From NCBI RefSeq assembly GCF_006345805.1, contig NC_043013.1, positions 26,474,001 to 26,538,000 of the forward strand: a DNA stretch of 64,000 nucleotides, given 5' to 3'. Origin of the DNA: Octopus sinensis. Taxonomy: Eukaryota. Position numbers and translations under genes: made by a program. This document shows, in pieces, positions 12,985 to 55,380 of this stretch. How positions within the stretch are numbered: position 1 is the stretch's first letter; each line of letters opens with the position of its first letter. The notes beneath the pieces are model-generated. The model had not been told where the DNA came from. It saw nothing but the letters and a program-made list of their open reading frames with translations, and did no database searches.

Positions 12985-13087
12985 TCAACGAGTTTTGTGT
13001 TCTGGATGGTTCACCAGTGAGTTAATAAAGTCAGTGGTTTTCATTTTGCGTTGACAAGTCAAATGGACAGCCACAAATATTGGGAAC
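12985..13087 (-). CDS. Gpd1: GPD exon 9 coding part (K)FPIFVAVHLTCQRKMKTTDFINSLVNHPEHKTR*, 103 nt including TGA
   Basis: Acceptor TATTTCTTTCAG. Conserved FPxFxAV and NHPEH C-terminus. The 3' UTR end could not be determined. Confidence 0.96.
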
Positions 13088-13629: not shown

Positions 13630-13736
13630 TTTTCTACCATCTTTTTGGATTTCAAAATTTCAAAAACTGCTTTGGCTACTAATGGTCCTTGAAAACTCTG
13701 GCCTTTTAAAATCTCTTCCTCCAGTTCAAGAAGGGT
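13630..13736 (-). CDS. Gpd1: GPD exon 8 TLLELEEEILKGQSFQGPLVAKAVFEILKSKKMVE(K), 107 nt
   Basis: Acceptor TTTTATTTTAAAG, donor GTAAGT. Contains GQxxQGP. Confidence 0.96.
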
Positions 13737-16757: not shown

Positions 16758-16867
16758 CTTATTAGAGTACACAAGAGCTTCTCCTAATTTCCTATTTCGT
16801 CCTCCTTGACAGGTAGTTACTAGATCAGCGAGGCCACAACTTTCAAAATATGTTCTCAAATTTGACT
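16758..16867 (-). CDS. Gpd1: GPD exon 7 (E)[36 protein letters not shown], 110 nt
   Basis: Acceptor TTTCTCTTCTTAG, donor GTATAC. Conserved ESCGxADLxTTCxGGRNR motif. Confidence 0.96.
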
Positions 16868-18105: not shown

Positions 18106-18226
18106 CTTTAAAAAAGAAATTGATGAATTCTATTATTTCCAACATGCCGAGTCTGACAATTGCGGCCTTGGTATTATCCCCCATTTTATGGCCATCACCA
18201 ATGCCTGCACCAACAGCAACTACATT
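18106..18226 (-). CDS. Gpd1: GPD exon 6 NVVAVGAGIGDGHKMGDNTKAAIVRLGMLEIIEFINFFFK, 121 nt
   Basis: Acceptor TTTCACTGTAG, donor GTGGGA (weak). Conserved NVVAVGAG and GDNTKAA motifs. Confidence 0.94.
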
Positions 18227-18606: not shown

Positions 18607-18719
18607 CTTTAATGCCCCACAAGCTTCAACTGTTGCAGCATCTTCAACAACTGAGCATCGGAAATAAGTTGTATCAAATAAATTTTTCATTAAAAGCCCT
18701 ACTTCTTTTTTTTTGCAAC
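18607..18719 (-). CDS. Gpd1: GPD exon 5 (G)[37 protein letters not shown], 113 nt
   Basis: Acceptor TTTTCCAG, donor GTAAAC. Ends on the catalytic lysine (GALK). Confidence 0.96.
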
Positions 18720-20039: not shown

Positions 20040-20545
20040 AGGCCATTGGAGTAATGAGGCTACATTTAAATCAAATAGCTTAATTAACCACCCCATCTAC
20101 ACCTAATAGGAATCAGAGAATCCACATATTATAGAAGAACATCATATTGATTTACCAAGAATTAAGTACGGTGTAGCTTATCATTAGAGGATTAATTGAA
20201 CCATTCTTTTTGTATGATACTCTGACTGCCCCTGCTTACTTGAACTTGCTGTAACAATCTGTTATGCCAAGAATTCAAGAGAATCTGGAGTTTTATTTGC
20301 AGCAAGATGAGCAGCCCAATATTACCACAGTAATGTAAGGGCCTATCTTGATTAGACTGGACAAAGAAGTTCAGTGGAATATCTTCCACCATTCACTGAA
20401 CCACACACAACTGGACATTTTATTTGTGGGGATACTTAAAAGATAAAGTCTATAGTACAAAAATCAGCAACAGTTGATGAAATGAGAGCAGGCATTAATC
20501 AAGAATCCAGACAAATACAGAATGAAATGTTCTTAATTACCAGTG
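20040..20545 (+). mobile_element. Tc1/mariner (rosa/Visitor-like) transposase remnant, 5' part
   Basis: [19 protein letters not shown], and a decayed PPxSPDxT..F.LWGYLKDKVY..ATVDEMRAGINQE. The element resumes after the CR1 insertion. Confidence 0.75.
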
Positions 20546-22007
20546 TCATTCCTCTGATTAAAAAGTGTGACTGCATGTTACCTGTCAACTATCACCCAGT
20601 CAGTCCTACTAGCTACATGGAACCCTGTGTCAGAGGAACACTCAGTAACTTTTGGAATTCTCACAGCCTTATCTGGCCCTCACAATTTGTATTCATCCCT
20701 AACTCCAGCTGCTGTGATCAACTTATCAAGCTTCTTGAAGACATCACCCAGGTCACTGATGGCAGCTCATGGGTGAATGTTGTTTACCTTGGCTTTGCTA
20801 AAGCTTTTAATTCTGTGCCACACAAAAGACTTATAGCAAAATTCTCTGTAATGAGTGTGAAGGATGATCTTTTTAACTGGTTGGATTCCTTCATTCTCAG
20901 CCAAAAAAAGATAGTCATGGTTCTAGGACAGCATTTTTTACTCTATGAGATGTTATCTGGTGTACCACAGGGATTTCTTCTTGGTCCCCTTTTGTTTGTT
21001 GCATACATTAATGACATAGATGCCAACTTAAAGAATGCCACAGAGCTGAAATATGCAGATGATATCAAGCTGTACCTTGAGATAAAAAGGACAGATCCTG
21101 AACACTATAGATCTTTCCTGCAATCAGTTCTAGACACAATGCAGCAATGGATCACAGACTGGCAACTCAAGCTGGCTGTGGACAAGTGTACCACCATGCA
21201 TTTTAGGAGGAAAAACTCAGCAACCACATACTCCCTCCACAACAATAAAATCAAGATATCTTCTTGTGAAAGTGACCTGGGCATTACTGTCAATAGCAAT
21301 TTGCGCTGGACAAAGCACATCTCTAAAATTGACAAGAAGGCTGAGAGTGTCTTAGCATCACTCAGTAAGAACTTTGTTAGCTGCTCTCCAGCTATCTATT
21401 TAAGGTTGTATATGGCTATTGTATGGCCACACTTGAAATTTGCATCACTAGTCTGGAACCCCTATCTTACTCAGGACATTGACCTCCTGGAAACTGTTCA
21501 GGGACATGCAACCAAGCAATTACCCTCCATCAGGCATCTACCATACTCTGAACACCTTGCTTCCCTGGGCATAGATACACTGAAGCTCCAACATCTAGCA
21601 AGTGATTTGGTAAACACCCACAAAATTATTAACCATAGTGCCAACAACCACCTTGAGCACCTTTTTGAACTCCATGTGTGTAACAGATGTGGGCATTCCT
21701 ACAAAGTTAGAAAACAGCACAGCTCCCATGACTTTCAGAAACATTTTTTCACACTCAGTGTTGCTGAAGCATGGAACAAACTACTTGCATCAGTTGTTAG
21801 ATGCTGAGACATTGCATCCTTTAAAACATCCATACTTCTTGAAATTCGCCAACACTATACCTAAAATCCCCCTCCATCCATACGTATGCACACACGTATA
21901 TCATGACTCATACACTGTTCACATTCCTGACTTTTGAACATAATTCTATGTATTTTGATAAGCTGTAGTGCACCTAAGCACTATACACAATAATTTCATT
22001 GTTGTTG

Positions 22008-27003: not shown

Positions 27004-27099
27004 TGTTAAGAAACACGTTTTATTGAAACTTTTCTGTAACTCAAAAGTAAAGTTAATTGGGTTATAAGAGTTCCCCTTTTTTTACAGTTAATAGATGCA

Positions 27100-27117
27100 C
27101 TGTGTGTGTGTGTGTGT

Positions 27118-27159
<42 letters not shown>

Positions 27160-27409
27160 TGTGTTTGTGAGTGTGTGCATGTATGTTTGTGTATGTGTGT
27201 TTGTGTGTGTTTGCGTGTGTATGTCTGTGTGTATATGTCTGTGTGTGTTTGTATGTGTGCTTGTGTGTGTAGGTCTGTGTGTGTTTGCATGTGTGCTTGT
27301 GTGTGTGTAAGTGTGTATGTGCATGTTTGTATGTGCATGTCTGTGTGCGTTTGTGTGTGTGCTTGTGTGTTTGTGTGTCTGTGTGTGCTTGTGTGTATGT
27401 TTGTGTATG

Positions 27410-27440
<31 letters not shown>
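27100..27440. repeat. Degenerate (TG)n microsatellite, about 340 bp
   Basis: Directly visible; source of the spurious HT/CV ORFs. Confidence 0.95.
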
Positions 27441-27719
27441 ATGAGAAAATAAAAATATAAAAACGTTGCTCTACAAAAAAAGTCCCTTGAAATATCTGCA
27501 TAGCACAGAATTACTGACAATCTTTTGCTATGCTTGCCATCAGAAGAAATACATAGAAAATCAGTGACTGAAACATCCGAAACCAACAACCAAATATGTT
27601 ACTATTATAAATAGTTGCAGAGAAAGATGGAGTGACAGTACTGTAAGATACATAACTATACACTAACTGAGCTGCTGTAGTCATAAGGATAATGAAAACA
27701 AAACAGCTACTCTGACTTG

Positions 27720-28285: not shown

Positions 28286-28424
28286 CAATTGTTGATTCAC
28301 AAAATAATTCATTTGCCACTTCATGTGCAAGGTTGGCACCCATTAACACAGCACATTCTATTCCAAGATTGCTCGCTATTACATCAGACAAAAGTCTAAT
28401 GCTTCCTTCAAACATATCAAAACC
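28286..28424 (-). CDS. Gpd1: GPD exon 4 [46 protein letters not shown](G), 139 nt
   Basis: Acceptor CTTTTACTAG, donor GTAAAT. Conserved LMGANxA and FCExTIG motifs. Confidence 0.97.
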
Positions 28425-30613: not shown

Positions 30614-30754
30614 TTTGATTAAAGATATAGCTACTGCTCCAGGTTTTACAGTTCCTTTAATGGTACTGCATATTCCTTGAACAAATTGGTGTGGTAAAAC
30701 AAATATTAAAATATCAGCATTTTCAGTGGCTTTGATAACATCAGGGATAGCAAC
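30614..30754 (-). CDS. Gpd1: GPD exon 3 VAIPDVIKATENADILIFVLPHQFVQGICSTIKGTVKPGAVAISLIK, 141 nt
   Basis: Acceptor TTGTTTTCTAG, donor GTAAAT. Conserved ADILIFVxPHQF and ISLIK motifs. Confidence 0.97.
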
Positions 30755-32930: not shown

Positions 32931-33111
32931 CACATTCTCAGGTATTTTGATTCCAGGAAGGTATTTAATGTTTATATGTGTAGTATTGAAAATTTCGGAG
33001 AGTTTCTGGCCCTCATATAGTTCTTCATACATGTACATGTTTATAGTACGTTCAAATAAATTTGTGCGCTCAATCACATTTTTGCCTGTAATTTTAGCAA
33101 TGGCTGTACCC
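32931..33111 (-). CDS. Gpd1: GPD exon 2 (W)GTAIAKITGKNVIERTNLFERTINMYMYEELYEGQKLSEIFNTTHINIKYLPGIKIPENV, 181 nt
   Basis: Acceptor ATTTTTCAG, donor GTAAGA. Open frame homologous to the NAD-binding domain. Confidence 0.95.
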
Positions 33112-40290: not shown

Positions 40291-41460
40291 ATATACCCAG
40301 TGTAAGCTATGGACACATAAGAGGTGCAGCAACATCAAAGGAAAATTAACTGAGAAGATGGCTTTCATGTGCAGCAGATGCACAGGGGCAATAGACACCA
40401 CAGATACTCAGTAAACAGATTTCATCACACTCCTGGGGGAGAAACTAGAAGTAGTTGATAGTTTCCGCTACCTAGGTGACCAAGTTAGTAGTAGGGGTGA
40501 ATAAGAATAGCCTGGGCAAAATTTAGAAAGCTTCTTCCCCTACTGGCGACAAAGGCTCTCTCGCTCAGAGTGAAAGGTAGATTGTACGACGCATGTATGC
40601 AAACTGCCATGCTTCACGACAGTGAAAAATGGGCCATGACTGTGGAGGATATGTGTAGGCTCGAAAGAAATGAAGCTAGCATGATCCGCTGGATGTGTAA
40701 AGTCAGTATGCATGCACGACAGAGTGTAAGCGCCCTGAGAGAAATGTTGGACATAAGAAGCACTGGATGTGGTGTGCAGGAGAGACGTTTGTGTTGGTAT
40801 GGTCATGTACTACAGATGGATGAGGAGAGATGTGTGAGGAAGTGCCACTCTCAAACTGTTGAAGGAATCTGGGGTAGAGGTAGACCCAGGAAGACAAGGG
40901 ATGAGGTGGTCAAGCATGACCTTCGAATGTTGAGCCTCACAGAGCCTATGGCAAAAGACCAAGACCTCTGAGATATGCCGTGACTGCGAAGGCCCAACAA
41001 ATGAAGTGAGTTCATGGCTTGCAGGACGGCCTGCTGTGCTAACCTTGGATCGTAGGGTGACCTGATGTACTTGAGGAGACCTATTGAGTCAAGTACATCT
41101 ACATCAAAATTAAAATCAATGGAAATTGTAGTTGTGATACCTGTGCCGGTGGCATGTAAAAAGCACCATCCGAATGTGGCCGATGCCAGCGCCGCCTTGA
41201 CTGGCGTCCATGCTGGTGACATGCAAAAAGCACCAACCGACCGTGGCCGTTTGCCAGCCTCCTCTGGTCCCTGTGCGAGTGGCAAGTAAAAAGCACCCAC
41301 TACACTCACGGAGTGGTTGGCATTAGGAGGGGCATCCAGCTGTAGAAACACTGCCAAATCAGACTGGAGCCTGGTGCAGCCTCCTGGCTTCCCAGACCCC
41401 AGTTGAACCGTCTAACCCATGCTAGCATGGAAAACGGACGTTAAACGATGAGGAGGAGGA
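40290..41460 (+). mobile_element. RTE-clade LINE, 5'-truncated (ORF C-terminus plus 3' UTR)
   Basis: CKLWTHKRCS, LEVVDSFRYLGD, KGRLYDACMQTAMLH..RLCWYGHVLQMDE..RGRPRKT; ends GGACGTTAAACGATGAGGAGG. Confidence 0.9.
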
Positions 41461-44084: not shown

Positions 44085-45135
44085 TTGGCCTCCTTCTGTT
44101 TGTTGCATACATTAATGACATAGATGCCAACTTAAAAAATGCCACAGAGCTGAAATATGTAAATGATATCAAGCTCTACCTTGAGATAAAAAGGACAGAT
44201 CCTGAACACTATAGATCATTCCTGCAATCAGATCTAGACACAATGCAGCAATGGATCACAGACTGGCAACTCAAGCTGGCTGTGGACAAGTATACCACCA
44301 TGCATTTTAGGAGGAAAAACCCAGCATTCACATACTCCCTCCACAACACTAATATCAAGATGTCTTCTAGTGAACATGACCTGGGCATTACTGTCAACAG
44401 CAATTTGCACTGGACAAAGCACATCTCTAAAATTGACAAGAAGGCTGAGAGTGTCTTAGCATCACTCAGCAAGACCTTTGTCAGTCACCCTCCAGCTATC
44501 TATTTAAGGTTGTATATGGCTATGGTGTGGCTACACTTGGAATTTGCATCACTAGTCTGGAACCCCTATCTTACTCAGGACATTGACCTCCTGGAAACTG
44601 TTCAGGGACATGCAACCAAGCAATTACCCTCCATCAGGCATCTACCATACTCTGAATGCCTTGCTTCCCTGGGCATAGATACACTGAAGCTCCAACATCT
44701 AGCAAGTGATTTGGTAAACACCCACACAATTATTAACCATCATGCCAACAACCACCTTGAGCACCTTTTTGAATTCCATGTGTGTAACAGATGTGGGCAT
44801 GCCTACAAAGTCAATAAACAGCACAGCTCCCATGACTTTCGGAAACATTTTTTCATACTCAGAGTTGCTGACGCACAGAACAAACTACATGCATCAGTTG
44901 TTAGATGCTGAGACACTGCATCCTTTAAAACCGCCATGCTTCCTGAAATTCACCAATACTACACCTGATATCCCACCCCAACTCCATACACATGCACACA
45001 CGTATACCATGACTCATACACTGTTCACTTTCCTGACTTTTGTACATAATACTATGTACTATATATATGCACCTTTGATAAGCTGTAGTGCAACTGAGCA
45101 CCATACACAATAATTTCATTGTTATTATTATTTTA
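44085..45135 (+). mobile_element. CR1-clade LINE, 5'-truncated
   Basis: Collinear and highly similar to 20980-22010; ORF 44243-44911. Confidence 0.92.
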
Positions 45136-51340: not shown

Positions 51341-52749
51341 CAGGGTGTTCATAAAGACTTTCTGCAGTGAATTTTTTTCATCCTGCACACGCACAACTTG
51401 GCTATCACTGCATGATGGGGCTGGGTATCAGCGTTTGTCACTCAGTCACTGTGTACCCTTCAGCATGTTGACATGCTAACCATTGAAGAACATACATTTT
51501 TAGGTGAATGGGTATTTTGAGCATGGAAACAAATACCCAGATACTGTGAAACAGAAGTTCAGTGAAACTTTTCCAAATACTTTTGTTCCACATCGTGACA
51601 CTGTGTAGGATTTGATAAGAAAATTTAGAAACACAGGCTCAATGGAAGATGCAGCAAGAAGCAGTAGGTCTACTGTTCTTTCAAACGAAACACTCTCCAA
51701 TATTTTTGATGAACTATTGGAAAGCCCGTCAAAGACCTTACTCAAATTGTCACAGGAAACGGAAATCAGCCTAGGAAGTGCTCACGCAGCAGTAAAAAAG
51801 AAATTAAATTTCTATACATACAAAGTGCTGGCCATTCAAGAATTGAAGACTATGGATCATGCTAAAAGGCTTCATTATTGTCATTGGTTCCAAAACTTTG
51901 TTGCCGAAAAAGGCATAGAAGTGCTGGATGGGTGTTTTTACACCGATGAAGCTTGGTTTCATCTGTCGGGACCCATAAATTCGCATAAGACAAGGTTATC
52001 GCAACACGAGCAATCTCTGCATATCGGAAAAGTTGGAGTATGGATAGCAATTTCGAGAAAGCGTATTGTGGGACTGATATTTTTTTAAGACACCATCAAC
52101 ACCTAGAGATATTGCTCAAATATTGTCTATCCATTTGTAGGCCAACTCACCGAAAGTGAAATTAATACTGTATACTTTCAGCAAGATGAAGCTACAGCGC
52201 ATACTTCGTGCATCACCATGGCGCTACTTCAAGAGTTTTACGGTGAACGGATTATTTCGAAGAGACTTCACCAAGATCACCTGGTTTAACACCGCCAGAC
52301 ATTTTTTTTTCTGGCGAGCAAGTAAAGCATCAGTGTACAAGAATCGCCCGAAAACCATTAATGATATTCTCTAACCTCATAAGAGACATTCTGAGCAACT
52401 GCACGAACAGACAGACCTCCAATAAAGCATATTTAGAATTAGAAAATCAACCAGCCCCTATAACAGAATATACACCAATACTAGAAATACATAAAAATAT
52501 TATCATCCTTATACCATGCAATCATAACCTTCACACGGTCCATATCGTGTCAGATACACCAAGATATATTTCAAAACATGTGTAGAAGAGTCAACTTATG
52601 TATTGTAAATGAAGGACGACACCTTCAACACCTCTTATAAAGTTTTTTAAAGTCTTGTAAAGTCTAATATATTCTTTTGTAGTCTTATATCATCTCATAA
52701 ATATATATTTTGCAATAAAATACTGCGGGGAGACTTTTTGAAAACCCTG
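51341..52749 (+). mobile_element. Near full-length Tc1/mariner element (rosa/Visitor-like), transposase pseudogene
   Basis: Imperfect TIRs CAGGGTGTTCATAAAGACTTTCTGCAGT / ACTGCGGGGAGACTTTTTGAAAACCCTG; TA TSD. Motifs KFRNTGS, FYTDEAWFHL, FQQDEATAH, PRSPGLTPPD and RRVNLCIVNEGRHLQHLL*; stops and frameshifts present. Confidence 0.9.
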
Positions 52750-53062: not shown

Positions 53063-53690
53063 GGCGAAGTTTCGCATGTCGTAGCACAGATTTCCGTCGA
53101 TTTTCGTAAAAAACTTTTATTTTTTTACATAAGTAATGAGAGCGAAAGAGACTAAGAGGAAGCGATTTTATGACGAGAAGGTTTCTCTTTGAAATCGGCC
53201 TGTGTGTGTTTGATGGGGTGTGGGAGACAGACAGTATGTTGTGTAAGTGAAGTGCTTCTGTTAGTGTGTGCGAAGAGACAGAGAGAGTAATGTGTGAAAG
53301 AGATAACTGAAATTTTACTCGGTGTATGTGTATATGTATGTATGCATGTATGTGTGTGTGTGTGTATGTATCTATGTATGTGTGTGTAAGTATGTGTGTG
53401 TGTATGTATGTATGTATGGCCGATTCATCGTAATTTTTTACTCGGTGTATGTGTATATGTATGTCTGCATGTATGTATGTGTGTGTATGTTATGTATCTA
53501 TGTATGTGTGTATGTGTATGTATGTATGTGTGTATGTATGTATGGTCGATTCAGTGTAATTTTTTACTCGGTGTATGTGTATGTCTGCATGTATGTGTGT
53601 GTGTATGTATCTATGTGTGTGTGTGTGTGTGTGTAAGTATGTGTGTGTGTATGTATGTATGTATGTATGTGTGTATATATATATACATAC
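53063..53690 (+). mobile_element. Non-autonomous TIR element (MITE), left TIR intact, right end lost in microsatellite
   Basis: About 250 bp nearly identical to 58800-59070. Its left end matches the reverse complement of 59238-59288. Confidence 0.75.
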
Positions 53691-53780: not shown

Positions 53781-54395
53781 TGATAGATCTGTCATAATAA
53801 AGAAACACTCGTCAAGAATATTATGCAAATAGAGATATTCGAAGCATGGATAGCATTGTAGCATAGTATGAAACAAACAAAATATTGCTGTGTTTATGTT
53901 ATTATGTTGTTGCAGTGAATGAAAGCTGCTAAAGAAAACGTTTATGGAGAAGAAGAAGACGCAGCCAAAGTAGAAAACTTTCCTGTAACTTCATCATTTG
54001 AAAGTCATTTCGTTATTCTATTTTAGAGGAATAACACAGGTCTTTAAAATGAAAACAGAAATACGTTGCGTAATTCCCCCTTATGCATATACGATTGTGT
54101 GTCTGTGTGATTTCCCCATAATCATTCAATAATTGGTGATTTATGAAGGTTTAAAATAACACGAAACTGAGAGAAGAGTGAAAAAGGTTTTCAACGAAAT
54201 TGTGGAAATAGATTAATGGTTTTATTAGTTATATATAAATATATATATGGATAAATTTATATATGTGCCTACATATGTATGTGTGTATGTATGCACGTGT
54301 GTACACGTCCGTATAGAAATGTATGTATATTGTATATATGAGTATATTGTATATAATTATGCTTATATGTTTATATAAATGTGTGTGTGTCTATG

Positions 54396-54456
<61 letters not shown>

Positions 54457-54615
54457 GGAGATATAGATAGATAGATAGATAGATACAAGGAGATATAGAT
54501 AGATAGAGAGAGAGATTGAGACGGGGGAGATAGATAGATAGATAGACAGATAGAGAGAGAGAGAGAGAGGGAGATAGAGAGATAAACATATTTAAAAAAA
54601 AAAAAAACAACGAAC

Positions 54616-54656
54616 CAATTTCCTGATCCTATGATACAAACTTTCTTCGGAGCCAT
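54616..54656 (-). CDS. Gpd1: GPD exon 1 coding part (MAPKKVCIIGSGN-TG), 41 nt
   Basis: ATG at 54656 in strong context (AACATGG). Donor GTTCGT at 54615. Same length and phase-2 junction as human GPD1 exon 1 (recalled sizes). Confidence 0.95.
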
Positions 54657-54872
54657 GTTCGTAGCATAAGTCAATGGAGATTGTTGAGTATGTAGTGTGC
54701 GTTGAGTGGCGAACGATACCAAGTTAAATGGCGTTGACAAAAGCCTGTAGCAGACGATATCCTTGAGACTGTTTGCAAGGACATTGATGTCAGGGCGTAC
54801 AGTGCGGTGGTGGTGATGACGGGAGTAGGTGGTGGTGCATTTGAGAATGTGGTTGGACGTACACCTGAGCAT
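54657..54872 (-). CDS. Gpd1: Putative in-frame N-terminal extension of GPD (72 aa), resembling a mitochondrial presequence
   Basis: ATG at 54872 (CACATGC, weak context) is open and in frame to the MAPKK ATG. 6 R + 2 K versus 2 D and 0 E; S/T-rich; contains RLLST and RTLHT. Confidence 0.55.
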
Positions 54873-55199
54873 GTGGTAAGAAGTGAATCCAGACCACAGC
54901 ACTGCAGCGCTAAGGAGAAGAGGTCAGAGAACGGGGTCAGGCGAGCGAAGTAACCCAGCTGTTACATCAAATTATTATTATTTAGTTTGTACGATTATCG
55001 CGTCGTTAGATGTGTATAACCTGCTGATATAAACTATTGATAAATAAAAGGGAGTGTTTTACTAAAGCACAGAAAGTCCAATCAATTAGATGAACATGAA
55101 CAAAACGAACATAAAAAATATTAAAGTAAATTGTCCATTGTTTTGATCACAGATGCTGATGCTGCCAATGAATATTTTTTTCTTTTTGAAATAGTTGTA

Positions 55200-55380
55200 A
55201 GCGTAGCTGTGTAGTAAGAGGTTTGCCTTCCAATCACATGTTTCCGAGTTCAGTCCCACTGCGTAGCCCCTGGGACAATTGTCTTCTCCAAAACCTTGCC
55301 AGTGGATTTGGCAGACGGAAACTGAAAGAAGCATATCGTGTATGTGTGTGTGTGTGTATGTATGTTTGTGTCTGTGTGTA
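55200..55380 (+). mobile_element. SINE family B 5' half
   Basis: TAGCTGTGTAGTAAG...GAGTTCAGTCCCACTGCG...GGAAACTGAAAGAAGC. Its 3' half lies at 56225-56420. Confidence 0.75.

What the first reader, a model, noticed from the sequence alone, without database searches (positions are those of the whole stretch)
54657..54872. Hidden 72-aa N-terminal extension with mitochondrial-presequence hallmarks on a 'cytosolic' NAD-GPDH
Seen: an ATG at 54872 opens MLRCTSNHILKCTTTYSRHHHHRTVRPDINVLANSLKDIVCYRLLSTPFNLVSFATQRTLHTQQSPLTYATN, in frame with MAPKK. It has no acidic residue in the first 27 aa, 8 basic versus 2 acidic overall, 17 S/T, and two R-X-L-(S/H)-T motifs (RLLST, RTLHT) typical of processing sites. 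The upstream AUG has a weak context (CACAUGC) and the downstream AUG a strong one (AACAUGG). Established: GPD1 is the cytosolic arm of the glycerophosphate shuttle, which is prominent in cephalopod muscle, and yeast Gpd2 carries an N-terminal mitochondrial presequence. Inference: one gene may make both cytosolic and mitochondrial NAD-GPDH via alternative TSS or leaky scanning, which would add a matrix NADH/DHAP reaction. Caveat: three weak out-of-frame AUGs lie inside the extension, which favours alternative TSSs over scanning.
Basis: partly seen in the sequence, partly recalled or inferred. Interest (0 to 1): 0.8.

Follow-up and report, generated by a model that had tools for sequence, protein, structure and literature searches.

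The report
Conserved N-terminal leader on octopus GPD1 paralogue
An octopus gene for a second, divergent copy of the enzyme NAD-glycerol-3-phosphate dehydrogenase carries a real 72-residue N-terminal leader that octopuses, argonauts and cuttlefish all keep; it may send the enzyme into mitochondria, but this is unproven and the leader is already in public gene models.

Summary

It is not hidden. The window is Octopus sinensis, and RefSeq XP_029646793.2 and O. vulgaris CAI9735202.1 are already the 423-aa form.

It is not the canonical cytosolic GPD1. Octopus has a separate, slowly evolving 351-aa GPD1 on the same chromosome with no extension. The window gene belongs to a divergent molluscan paralogue group with the signature GQSFQGP.

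The extension is coding:
- The frame stays open for 64-104 codons in four cephalopod lineages (joint chance about 1e-8).
- Indels inside it are in frame.
- dN/dS is 0.32 in Octopus.
- A 12-residue core, NVLxxxLKDIVC, is conserved.
- Spliced cuttlefish mRNAs carry it together with 5'UTR.
- An extra Argonauta copy has accumulated stops there.

Mitochondrial targeting is plausible but unproven. The N-terminus is basic, acid-poor and predicted disordered. However, amphipathicity is not above random ORFs, and the RLLST/RTLHT motifs are not conserved.

The canonical AUG, in a strong context, is kept in every lineage. That allows two products, but nothing here shows them.

Interest is moderate.

The parts
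54657..54872 (-). 72-codon N-terminal extension ORF (MLRC...YATN), contiguous with the canonical exon 1
   Evidence: Identical to residues 1-72 of public protein P0002, which is XP_029646793.2 / CAI9735202.1.
54870..54872 (-). Upstream start codon AUG1, weak context (C at -3, C at +4)
   Evidence: The context is also weak in O. bimaculoides and Argonauta. In the two decapodiforms there is a purine at -3.
54924..54926 (-). First in-frame stop (TGA) upstream of AUG1. It bounds the open frame at 89 codons above the canonical ATG.
54750..54785 (-). Conserved core of the extension, N30-V-L-A-N-S-L-K-D-I-V-C41. It lies within the helix predicted for residues 29-45 (54738-54788).
   Evidence: Protein alignment A2. 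Codon table with synonymous third-position changes, and dN/dS of 0.17-0.34 between Octopus and the decapodiforms. It is the 5' limit of DNA that can be aligned between Octopus and Argonauta. AlphaFold predicts helix 29-45. The segment is not amphipathic.
54838..54840 (-). Out-of-frame AUG (+32, 16-codon ORF) inside the extension
54782..54784 (-). Out-of-frame AUG (+88, 37-codon ORF ending 14 nt before the canonical AUG)
54665..54667 (-). Out-of-frame AUG (+205, 12-codon ORF overlapping the canonical AUG)
54616..54656 (-). Canonical part of exon 1 (MAPKKVCIIGSGNW). Its AUG has a strong context (A at -3, G at +4). The GT donor is at 54615-54614.
32931..33111 (-). Exon 2, after a 21.5-kb intron 1
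   Evidence: AG/GT boundaries.
30614..30754 (-). Exon 3
28286..28424 (-). Exon 4. It is missing from the O. bimaculoides assembly.
18607..18719 (-). Exon 5
18106..18226 (-). Exon 6 (contains the catalytic K-N of GALKN)
16758..16867 (-). Exon 7 ([14 protein letters not shown] substrate-binding segment)
13630..13736 (-). Exon 8 (carries the paralogue signature GQSFQGP)
12985..13087 (-). Exon 9 and stop codon

Best explanation
Window 12985-54872 (minus strand) is the Octopus sinensis copy of a divergent molluscan GPD1 paralogue with an intact NAD-G3P dehydrogenase domain and the signature GQSFQGP. It is not the canonical cytosolic GPD1, which is a separate gene on the same chromosome.

In coleoid cephalopods the first coding exon of this paralogue acquired a translated N-terminal leader of 64-105 residues. 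It has three parts: a fast-evolving, basic, acid-poor, disordered N-terminus of about 25-30 residues; a conserved 12-residue core (NVLxxxLKDIVC); and a length-variable S/T/N/H-rich linker that runs into the old initiator Met.

Shown here: the leader is coding, under purifying selection, present in mature mRNA in decapodiforms, and structurally detached from the enzyme fold.

Inferred: the leader most likely works as an N-terminal organelle-import signal, with a mitochondrial presequence as the best single candidate. Translation from AUG1 would then give an imported long form.

Also inferred: the retained strong-context AUG2 may additionally give a short cytosolic form.

I put the coding extension at about 0.9. 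I put mitochondrial targeting at about 0.4.
For: Gene and family:
- Nine exons with AG/GT boundaries give 351 aa from MAPKK.
- Pfam PF01210 and PF07479 match far above their cut-offs, starting at residue 77.
- Human GPD1 structures align from residue 72/73 (E = 1e-122). SLIKG, GALKN and ADL..TT..GGRNRK are conserved.

Paralogy:
- The canonical Octopus GPD1, P0196 = XP_029646788.1, is 351 aa, carries GQKLQGP and falls in the same 90%-identity cluster as the Argonauta protein P0141.
- It has a stop 5 codons upstream of its ATG.
- The tree and the signature place the window gene with the GQSFQGP group. Many molluscs have both paralogues.

The extension is coding:
- The public models of O. sinensis/O. 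vulgaris (423 aa), O. bimaculoides (403/435 aa), Argonauta (417 aa) and Sepia pharaonis (437 aa) all include it.
- The in-frame ATG-initiated ORF is 72, 77, 64, 84 and 104 codons in five species. By chance this is 0.6-1.6% each, or about 9e-9 jointly.
- Both indels inside it between O. sinensis and O. bimaculoides are in frame (12 and 3 nt). Upstream indels are 1, 27, 1, 2, 2 and 4 nt.
- dN/dS is 0.32, with 8 synonymous changes out of 17 (binomial P = 0.028).
- The conserved core has synonymous changes and dN/dS of 0.17-0.34.
- The Sepia extension is about 95% identical between two species, against 85% with 21 gap positions for the adjacent 5'UTR.
- Thirty Sepia RNA contigs are on record. The 19 inspected, plus one contig from another decapodiform, are spliced and carry AUG1; the Sepia contigs have up to 476 nt of 5'UTR.
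- An Argonauta-specific extra copy keeps recognisable exon-1 homology but has several in-frame stops in the extension region. This shows how quickly the frame decays without selection.

Targeting-like properties:
- There is no acidic residue before position 25-37 in any lineage, and net charge over the first 30 residues is +1 to +5. Fisher's combined P against random ORFs is 0.005.
- AlphaFold gives pLDDT below 50 for residues 1-27 and 34-70, against above 90 for the enzyme.
- There is no PTS2, no PTS1 and no 19-residue hydrophobic segment.
- All 23 extended GPD1 models from other invertebrates have net charge of at least +3 and keep the canonical Met.

Precedent: yeast Gpd2 is cytosolic and mitochondrial (PMC9428294; PMC8124512).
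Against: Against mitochondrial targeting:
- Amphipathic-helix strength in the first 40 residues (0.42-0.65) is within the range of random ORFs from the window (mean 0.46).
- The conserved core is not amphipathic. Its hydrophobic moment is 0.07-0.19, and 65-95% of shuffles reach that value.
- The Argonauta N-terminus has net charge of only +1.
- The putative MPP motifs are specific to Octopus species.
- A 12-residue core conserved since the octopod-decapodiform split is unusual for a cleaved presequence. It hints at another role, such as binding or regulation.
- Leaders of 64-105 residues are long for a presequence.
- In Sepia the extension's own dN/dS is about 1.2, from 2.8 synonymous and 10.2 non-synonymous changes.
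- No dedicated predictor (TargetP, MitoFates) and no localisation data were available.

On Octopus itself: there is no direct transcript or transcription-start evidence. The only support there is the gene models.
Confidence: 0.42

Rival explanations
1. The extension is translated but is not an import signal. It would be a flexible N-terminal regulatory or docking tail on a cytosolic enzyme. The conserved NVLxxxLKDIVC core would act as a short linear binding motif, and the S/T-rich flanks as phosphorylation targets. This is analogous to the N-terminal tails of yeast Gpd1 and Gpd2, which are inhibited by phosphorylation.
For: - The conserved core lies inside a disordered tail.
- The core is not amphipathic, and amphipathicity overall is not above random.
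- The leader is long (64-105 aa) and S/T-rich (17 of 72).
- Yeast Gpd1 and Gpd2 are regulated by phosphorylation in their N-termini (PMC9428294).
- No conserved MPP site was found.
Against: - No phospho-motif is conserved across lineages. R-x-x-S occurs only in Octopus species and the unidentified decapodiform.
- The consistent lack of acidic residues and the positive charge at the extreme N-terminus, in cephalopods and in 23 of 23 extended models from other phyla, is what import signals look like. A generic regulatory tail would not need it.
Confidence: 0.33
2. One gene makes two proteins: a long, mitochondrial form from AUG1 and a short, cytosolic form from the canonical AUG. The mechanism would be alternative transcription starts or leaky scanning.
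For: - The canonical Met is kept in all five cephalopod lineages although the residues before it are unconserved. It always has a purine at -3 and G at +4.
- AUG1 has a weak context in the three octopods.
- The interval between the AUGs has only 0-1 AUG in Argonauta, Sepia and the other decapodiform.
- Effectively all extended GPD1 models in other invertebrates keep the Met. Several are annotated as X1/X2 isoform pairs.
- The Argonauta extra copy shows that the canonical AUG can stand alone.
Against: - Octopus has 3-4 out-of-frame AUGs between the two starts, one of whose ORFs overlaps AUG2. That argues against scanning there.
- The decapodiform AUG1 has a purine at -3.
- All 19 Sepia RNA contigs inspected contain AUG1, and none starts inside the extension.
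- RefSeq gives a single isoform for O. sinensis.
- A separate canonical cytosolic GPD1 gene removes the need for a short form.
- G at +4 follows automatically from the conserved Ala codon.
Confidence: 0.25
3. The 'extension' is untranslated 5' leader. The open frame would be chance or an artefact of annotation pipelines choosing the longest ORF. Translation would start at MAPKK, and the protein would be an ordinary cytosolic GPD1.
For: - In one species alone the ORF is only a 1.2% event, and its composition a roughly 5% event.
- Gene callers do take the longest ORF.
- The upstream non-coding DNA is about as conserved between O. sinensis and O. bimaculoides (7% mismatch) as the extension.
- The extension's own dN/dS in Sepia is about 1.2.
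Against: - The frame is open with an ATG near its 5' limit in four independently diverged lineages. It spans 64-104 codons despite many indels, with a joint chance of about 1e-8.
- All indels are in frame.
- There is a conserved amino-acid core with synonymous substitutions.
- dN/dS is 0.32 in Octopus.
- The frame decays in the unconstrained Argonauta duplicate.
- The canonical paralogue has a stop 5 codons upstream of its ATG.
Confidence: 0.06
4. The leader targets another compartment: peroxisome through PTS2 as in yeast Gpd1, the ER or secretory pathway, or a membrane anchor.
For: - Yeast Gpd1 uses an N-terminal PTS2 (PMC5314374 was listed; PMC9428294).
- The Sepia N-terminus has an 11-residue hydrophobic run, VTVAAAVGLLL.
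Against: - There is no PTS2 consensus and no PTS1 in any of eight extended molluscan proteins.
- The maximum 19-residue Kyte-Doolittle mean is 1.4 or less in all of them. Octopus has no hydrophobic run at all.
Confidence: 0.04

Closest known systems
Saccharomyces cerevisiae Gpd2 (NAD-GPDH with an N-terminal mitochondrial presequence; found in cytosol and mitochondria)
   Same: Both are a second NAD-GPDH paralogue that differs from its sister mainly by an N-terminal extension ahead of an intact catalytic domain. In both, the sister paralogue covers the other compartment (PMC9428294; PMC8124512).
   Different: The acquisition was independent. The cephalopod leader has no sequence relatives outside cephalopods: 0 hits among 1.84 billion representatives. 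It is longer (64-105 aa) and contains a conserved non-amphipathic core. Localisation is untested.
Saccharomyces cerevisiae Gpd1 N-terminal tail (PTS2 plus inhibitory phosphorylation sites)
   Same: Both are a disordered N-terminal tail on a GPD1-family enzyme that carries sorting or regulatory information.
   Different: There is no PTS2 consensus in any cephalopod leader. No phospho-motif is conserved across the lineages.
Canonical animal cytosolic GPD1 (human GPD1, PDB 1X0V/6E8Y; Octopus XP_029646788.1)
   Same: The fold, the domains and the catalytic residues are the same. About 55% identity to the Octopus canonical paralogue.
   Different: The canonical form starts at the Met that is residue 73 here, and in Octopus it has a stop 5 codons upstream of that Met. 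The window gene belongs to the divergent GQSFQGP group and evolves faster: 73% identity between Octopus and Argonauta, whereas the canonical pair falls in one 90%-identity cluster.
Long 'isoform X1' GPD1 gene models of other invertebrates (beetles, stick insect, amphipods, crayfish, isopod, sea urchins, bryozoan, Lymnaea, Haliotis, Babylonia)
   Same: They carry 37-95-residue N-terminal extensions that are basic and acid-poor. The canonical Met is retained at the junction in effectively all 23.
   Different: Their sequences cannot be aligned with the cephalopod leader. Most lie in the canonical GQKLQGP group. Whether they come from separate upstream exons was not examined. No paper describing them was found.
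Two-AUG dual-localisation genes such as yeast HTS1/VAS1 (from my own knowledge, not tested here)
   Same: There are two in-frame AUGs: the first adds a presequence, and the second sits at the start of the mature enzyme.
   Different: In those genes, transcripts starting between the AUGs are documented. Nothing of that kind was seen here.

Membership tests
[quoted passage not shown] | Pfam NAD_Gly3P_dh_N (PF01210) and NAD_Gly3P_dh_C (PF07479) above their gathering scores | tested here: met
   149.1 and 127.5 bits against cut-offs of 23.1 and 25, covering residues 77-245 and 266-411 of the 423-aa form.
[quoted passage not shown] | Rossmann GxGxxG (GSGNWG) and the catalytic/substrate residues of human GPD1 (K120, K204, N205, D260, T264, R269, N270) | tested here: met
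   Alignment to 1X0V (E = 3e-122) shows SLIKG, GALKN and [14 protein letters not shown] conserved. The residue numbering comes from my own knowledge of the human structure.
Canonical cytosolic GPD1 orthologue group (the glycerophosphate-shuttle enzyme) | Orthology to the GQKLQGP-type GPD1 shared with other animals, with the protein starting at the Met before K-K-V/I-C-I-V-G | tested here: not met
   A different Octopus gene (P0196, XP_029646788.1) fills that slot. The window gene carries GQSFQGP, groups with the second molluscan paralogue, and starts 72 codons earlier.
Cleavable mitochondrial matrix-targeting presequence | N-terminal position, net positive charge, and few or no acidic residues | tested here: met
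   The first acidic residue is at position 25-37 in all lineages. Net charge over the first 30 aa is +4, +5, +1, +3 and +3. This is only mildly unusual against random ORFs (individual P from 0.024 to 0.31; Fisher's combined P = 0.005).
Cleavable mitochondrial matrix-targeting presequence | Capacity to form an amphipathic alpha-helix | tested here: not met
   The maximum 11-residue hydrophobic moment in the first 40 residues is 0.42-0.65, against a control mean of 0.46 and control maximum of 0.78. The helix predicted for residues 29-45 has a moment of 0.07-0.19, which 65-95% of shuffles reach. This is a crude measure, not a trained predictor.
Cleavable mitochondrial matrix-targeting presequence | MPP cleavage motif (R-2, R-3 or R-10) at a conserved position | tested here: inconclusive
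   RLL|S (R-3) occurs in O. sinensis and O. bimaculoides only. Weak R-10-like matches occur in O. bimaculoides and Sepia. None is found in Argonauta or the other decapodiform.
Cleavable mitochondrial matrix-targeting presequence | Membrane-potential-dependent import and processing; score from a trained predictor (TargetP, MitoFates, DeepLoc) | not testable with these tools
Two-AUG dual-product gene (alternative initiation) | Second in-frame AUG at the start of the mature domain, conserved and in a good context | tested here: met
   There is a Met at the junction in 5 of 5 cephalopod lineages, with A or G at -3 and G at +4.
Two-AUG dual-product gene (alternative initiation) | Transcripts starting between the AUGs, or an AUG-free interval with a weak first AUG | tested here: inconclusive
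   Octopus has a weak AUG1 but 3-4 intervening out-of-frame AUGs. The decapodiforms have 0-1 intervening AUGs but a purine at -3 of AUG1. All 19 Sepia RNA contigs inspected include AUG1. Contig ends are not transcription starts.
Peroxisomal PTS2 / PTS1 cargo (yeast Gpd1-like) | [RK][LVIQ]xx[LVIHQ][LSGAK]x[HQ][LAF] near the N-terminus, or an SKL-like C-terminus | tested here: not met
   No match in eight extended molluscan proteins. Their C-termini are KTR, KTH, GLH, KAN, AHL and FGV.
Signal peptide / signal anchor | Hydrophobic core long enough for SRP or the membrane | tested here: not met
   The maximum 19-residue Kyte-Doolittle mean is 0.8-1.4.

The most novel reading that the evidence does not exclude
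Coleoid cephalopods import an NAD-linked GPDH paralogue into mitochondria, and many other invertebrates whose GPD1 genes encode similar basic leaders do so convergently. This would create an NADH/DHAP-G3P reaction inside the organelle. It could, for example, supply G3P for phosphatidylglycerol and cardiolipin synthesis, or act as a matrix- or intermembrane-space-side partner of the FAD enzyme. The conserved canonical AUG would still allow a short cytosolic form. The NVLxxxLKDIVC core would be a new sorting or docking element.
Probability: 0.28. Interest if true: 0.7.

Novelty: new variant of a known kind. Interest (0 to 1): 0.5.

Why it matters
In animals, NAD-GPDH is treated as strictly cytosolic and as one half of the glycerophosphate shuttle. 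A conserved leader-bearing paralogue in cephalopods suggests an overlooked second location or a second mode of regulation for this enzyme. So do the look-alike long isoforms in arthropods, echinoderms and other molluscs.

If the long form is imported, there would be consequences for models of redox shuttling and of mitochondrial G3P supply in highly aerobic invertebrate tissues.

There are also practical points. The public name 'cytoplasmic' is a homology label placed on a model that contains an untested leader. The O. bimaculoides models are wrong in exon 4. Expression or proteomic studies of 'GPD1' in cephalopods need to separate the two paralogues.

Tried and rejected
1. L001 was the only hit to the 86-aa query. 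It looked like a relative with a stop and a TATA box inside the 'extension'. It is a compact fish gpd1 gene, and the upstream resemblance (RLLYPFAL) is chance.

2. O. sinensis against O. vulgaris has only one substitution in the extension, which is synonymous. The pair is too close to be informative.

3. I read the conserved LKDIV as a Tom20-type phi-x-x-phi-phi element on an amphipathic helix. The hydrophobic-moment test does not support amphipathicity, so I dropped it as evidence.

4. The PTS2, PTS1, signal-peptide and transmembrane readings found no motif and no hydrophobic segment.

5. A search for relatives of the leader alone among 1.84 billion representative proteins gave 0 hits. The leader is therefore lineage-specific. 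It also means no functional hint could be borrowed from elsewhere.

6. Rfam found nothing anywhere in the window.

7. Seven literature searches found no paper describing a mitochondrially targeted NAD-GPDH in animals, or the cephalopod paralogue. The library excludes most subscription journals, so absence there is weak evidence.

8. AUG depletion as a test for leaky scanning was not significant: 0-1 AUG in three lineages and 3-4 in Octopus.

9. The tree is a BLOSUM62 neighbour-joining tree with midpoint rooting and no bootstrap. The cephalopod group sits on a long branch. Its assignment to the GQSFQGP paralogue rests on the signature and on higher identity (60-63% against 55-56%), not on a robust phylogeny.
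Full report
**The observation.** On the minus strand, an ATG at 54872 opens 72 codons (MLRCTSNHILKC...PLTYATN). These run without interruption into MAPKKVCIIGSGNW at 54656, and exon 1 ends at a GT donor at 54615. The frame is open for 89 codons upstream of the canonical ATG, back to a TGA at 54926-54924. Its context calls are also correct. AUG1 is weak (taccacAUGc) and AUG2 is strong (acgaacAUGg). The three out-of-frame AUGs are at +32, +88 and +205.

Taken alone, the sequence is not remarkable. An ATG-initiated in-frame extension of at least 72 codons is found at 1.2% of random positions in this repeat-rich window. About 5% of random ORFs of at least 60 codons in the window are equally basic and acid-poor at their start.

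**The gene.** tblastn and splice-site inspection give nine exons from 54656 to 12985, all with AG/GT boundaries. They encode 351 aa from MAPKK, or 423 aa from AUG1. Intron 1 is 21.5 kb.

- The protein has both Pfam GPD domains, starting at residue 77.
- It aligns to human GPD1 structures from residue 72/73 (E = 1e-122), with the NAD motif and the catalytic and substrate-binding segments intact.
- AlphaFold, run with a 63-sequence alignment, gives pLDDT above 90 for the enzyme.
- AlphaFold gives pLDDT below 50 for residues 1-27 and 34-70. The only structure there is an isolated helix at 29-45.

**Where the window comes from, and what is already public.** The window is 100% identical to Octopus sinensis CM016875.1 and 98% identical to O. 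vulgaris. The 423-aa protein is already the public model. It is XP_029646793.2 in O. sinensis and CAI9735202.1 in O. vulgaris, named 'glycerol-3-phosphate dehydrogenase [NAD(+)], cytoplasmic'. So the extension is not hidden. What is untested is what it means.

**It is not the canonical cytosolic GPD1.** Octopus has a second gene on the same chromosome, about 17 Mb away. It encodes a 351-aa GPD1 (XP_029646788.1, P0196) that falls in the same 90%-identity cluster as its Argonauta counterpart and carries the pan-animal signature NGQKLQGP. Its ATG is preceded by an in-frame stop 5 codons upstream. That makes it a clean negative control.

The window gene carries GQSFQGP. This signature is shared with a second GPD1 paralogue found beside the canonical one in chitons, bivalves and gastropods. 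It is 60-63% identical to those proteins, against 55-56% to its own canonical paralogue. Most non-cephalopod members of that group have no extension. All cephalopod members in hand do.

The tree is neighbour-joining without bootstrap, and the cephalopod branch is long. The grouping therefore rests mainly on the signature and on identity.

**The extension is coding.** Seven lines of evidence agree.

1. *Open frame in every lineage.* Orthologues in O. bimaculoides (77 codons), Argonauta hians (64), Sepia (84; S. pharaonis GPD1 CAE1254534.1 is 437 aa) and a second, unidentified decapodiform (104 or more) all have an ATG-initiated, in-frame leader, despite extensive length change. The joint chance is about 9e-9.
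2. *In-frame indels.* Between O. sinensis and O. bimaculoides the two indels inside the leader are 12 and 3 nt. The six indels in the 380 nt upstream are 1, 27, 1, 2, 2 and 4 nt. The single Sepia indel is one codon.
3. *Purifying selection in Octopus.* dN/dS in the leader is 0.32, with 8 synonymous and 9 non-synonymous changes (P = 0.028 against neutrality). The catalytic part gives 0.30.
4. *A conserved core.* The core is N-V-L-x-x-x-L-K-D-I-V-C (window 54785-54750), shared by octopods and decapodiforms. It shows synonymous third-position differences and dN/dS of 0.17-0.34. It marks the 5' limit of DNA that can be aligned between Octopus and Argonauta.
5. *Sepia conservation relative to the UTR.* The Sepia leader is about 95% identical between two species. 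The adjacent 5'UTR is 85% identical with 21 gap positions. However, the leader's own dN/dS is about 1.2 on 13 changes, and its dS (0.048) is oddly lower than that of the catalytic part (0.149).
6. *Direct transcript evidence in decapodiforms.* Thirty Sepia RNA-seq contigs from many runs are on record for the leader-bearing ORF. The 19 inspected, and one contig from the other decapodiform, are spliced at the exon 1/2 junction and contain AUG1. The Sepia contigs have up to 476 nt of 5'UTR.
7. *A natural decay control.* An extra Argonauta-specific copy keeps recognisable exon-1 and leader-end homology, and even the downstream (CTAT)n repeat. It nevertheless has several in-frame stops just upstream of its Met. 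That is what the region looks like once selection for the frame is lost.

**What the leader does.** This part is inference. No trained predictor and no localisation data were available.

Points in favour of an import signal, most likely mitochondrial:
- The extreme N-terminus has diverged beyond alignment between lineages. It nevertheless always lacks acidic residues for 25-37 positions and is net positive. Fisher's combined P against random ORFs is 0.005.
- It is predicted disordered and detached from the enzyme fold.
- There is no PTS2, no PTS1, and no hydrophobic segment of signal-peptide or transmembrane grade.
- There is a fungal precedent: yeast Gpd2 is found in cytosol and mitochondria (PMC9428294, PMC8124512).
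- Strikingly, all 23 N-terminally extended GPD1 models from other invertebrates have net charge of at least +3 in their first 30 residues. These come from beetles, a stick insect, amphipods, a crayfish, an isopod, sea urchins, a bryozoan, Lymnaea, Haliotis and Babylonia. Many look like textbook presequences.

Points against:
- Helical amphipathicity is no better than in random ORFs.
- The conserved core is not amphipathic.
- The RLLST and RTLHT 'processing motifs' occur only in Octopus species.
- Argonauta has a net charge of only +1.
- The leader is long for a presequence.
- A sequence-conserved core is atypical for a cleaved presequence and suggests a binding or regulatory role. Yeast Gpd1 and Gpd2 are in fact regulated by phosphorylation of their N-terminal tails.

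I therefore put mitochondrial targeting at about 0.4, a non-targeting regulatory or docking tail at about 0.33, and other compartments at about 0.04. I put 'not translated' at about 0.06.

**One gene, two products?** The canonical Met is retained at the junction in every cephalopod lineage, although the residues before it are unconserved. It always has a purine at -3 and G at +4. The same Met is kept in essentially all extended models of other phyla. The Argonauta extra copy shows it can serve alone. This is the classic signature of a still-used second initiator.

It is only indirect evidence, however:
- Octopus has 3-4 out-of-frame AUGs in the interval, one of whose ORFs overlaps AUG2.
- No Sepia contig inspected starts inside the leader.
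- RefSeq lists one isoform.
- The separate canonical gene removes the physiological need for a short form.

I rate the dual-product model at about 0.25. It is not exclusive of the best explanation.

**Comparison with what is known.** The closest functional analogue is the yeast Gpd1/Gpd2 pair, whose paralogues differ in N-terminal sorting and regulatory tails. The cephalopod leader is an independent acquisition with no detectable relatives: 0 hits among 1.84 billion representative proteins. I found no paper describing an organelle-targeted NAD-GPDH in animals, or this cephalopod paralogue. The library lacks most subscription journals.

The enzyme is an ordinary member of the GPD1 family. The leader-bearing paralogue is best described as a new variant of a known kind.

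**Verdict.** The 'hidden' label, the identification as the shuttle's cytosolic enzyme and the processing motifs are wrong. Mitochondrial import and dual products remain plausible and untested. Interest is moderate (0.5). It would rise if import were shown, especially given the parallel long isoforms across invertebrates.

Noticed in passing
Proteins P0040, P0056, P0065, P0067, P0068, P0073, P0083-85, P0106, P0115, P0123, P0124, P0130, P0138, P0169, P0173, P0176, P0186, P0192, P0010, P0017, P0035: N-terminally extended GPD1 gene models (37-95 extra residues) occur in beetles, a stick insect, crustaceans, sea urchins, a bryozoan and gastropods. All 23 have net charge of at least +3 in their first 30 residues and keep the canonical Met. 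This may be a general, apparently undescribed, long isoform of animal GPD1.
   Followed up: partly
L029:9000-9340 (Argonauta hians BAAFZT010000020.1; protein P0064): This is a third, Argonauta-specific GPD1 copy from the cephalopod leader-bearing lineage. Its exon 1 (MRKRVCIIGSGYW, with N-to-Y in the GSGNWG motif) is preceded by several in-frame stops where the leader used to be. The public model starts only in exon 2. The copy may be decaying.
   Followed up: partly
L013 (O. bimaculoides CM046617.1), between exons 3 and 5; compare window 28286-28424 and 27062-27589: Exon 4 is missing from the O. bimaculoides assembly, which has 839 N in that interval. The public models XP_014785913.1 (403 aa) and the 435-aa model fill the gap with intronic sequence (VSDVSVTDFLRISSDGKHSKRLS...), which matches an intron-4 ORF of the window.
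   Followed up: partly
L002 against L015 (two Sepia species), leader against catalytic part: Synonymous divergence in the leader (dS 0.048) is about three times lower than in the rest of the CDS (0.149), although the 5'UTR is only 85% identical. This could reflect RNA-level constraint such as editing or structure, or just small numbers.
   Followed up: no
window 54396-54584 and 53323-53684: Long (TAGA)n/(CTAT)n and (TGTA)n microsatellites start about 30 nt into intron 1. The (CTAT)n array is also present after exon 1 in O. bimaculoides, in Argonauta and in the Argonauta extra copy. These repeats inflate long 'ORFs' in mechanical ORF lists, for example the 179-aa ORF at 54363-54902.
   Followed up: no
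window 20482-21807 (+), 44243-44911 (+), 40570-40971 (+), 51612-52088 (+): There are intronic ORFs that look like retrotransposon reverse-transcriptase fragments (a YADD-type motif, in two related copies) and a transposase-like fragment. They lie inside introns 4 and 1 of the GPD gene, on the opposite strand.
   Followed up: no
L001 (Logan SRR15600130): This was the only hit to the 86-aa leader+exon-1 query. It is a compact fish gpd1 gene whose exon 1 happens to encode the identical MAPKKVCIIGSGNW. The word-indexed search failed to return the exact public proteins P0002, P0004 and P0005.
   Followed up: yes
window 54873-55250 against L013: The 380 nt upstream of AUG1 are 93% identical between O. 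sinensis and O. bimaculoides, with an AT-rich block (TTTATTTATCAATAGTTTATATCAGCAG, around 55025-55052) and a minimal ATG-TAA uORF around 54967. This is a likely promoter or 5'UTR, but no transcription-start data were available.
   Followed up: no
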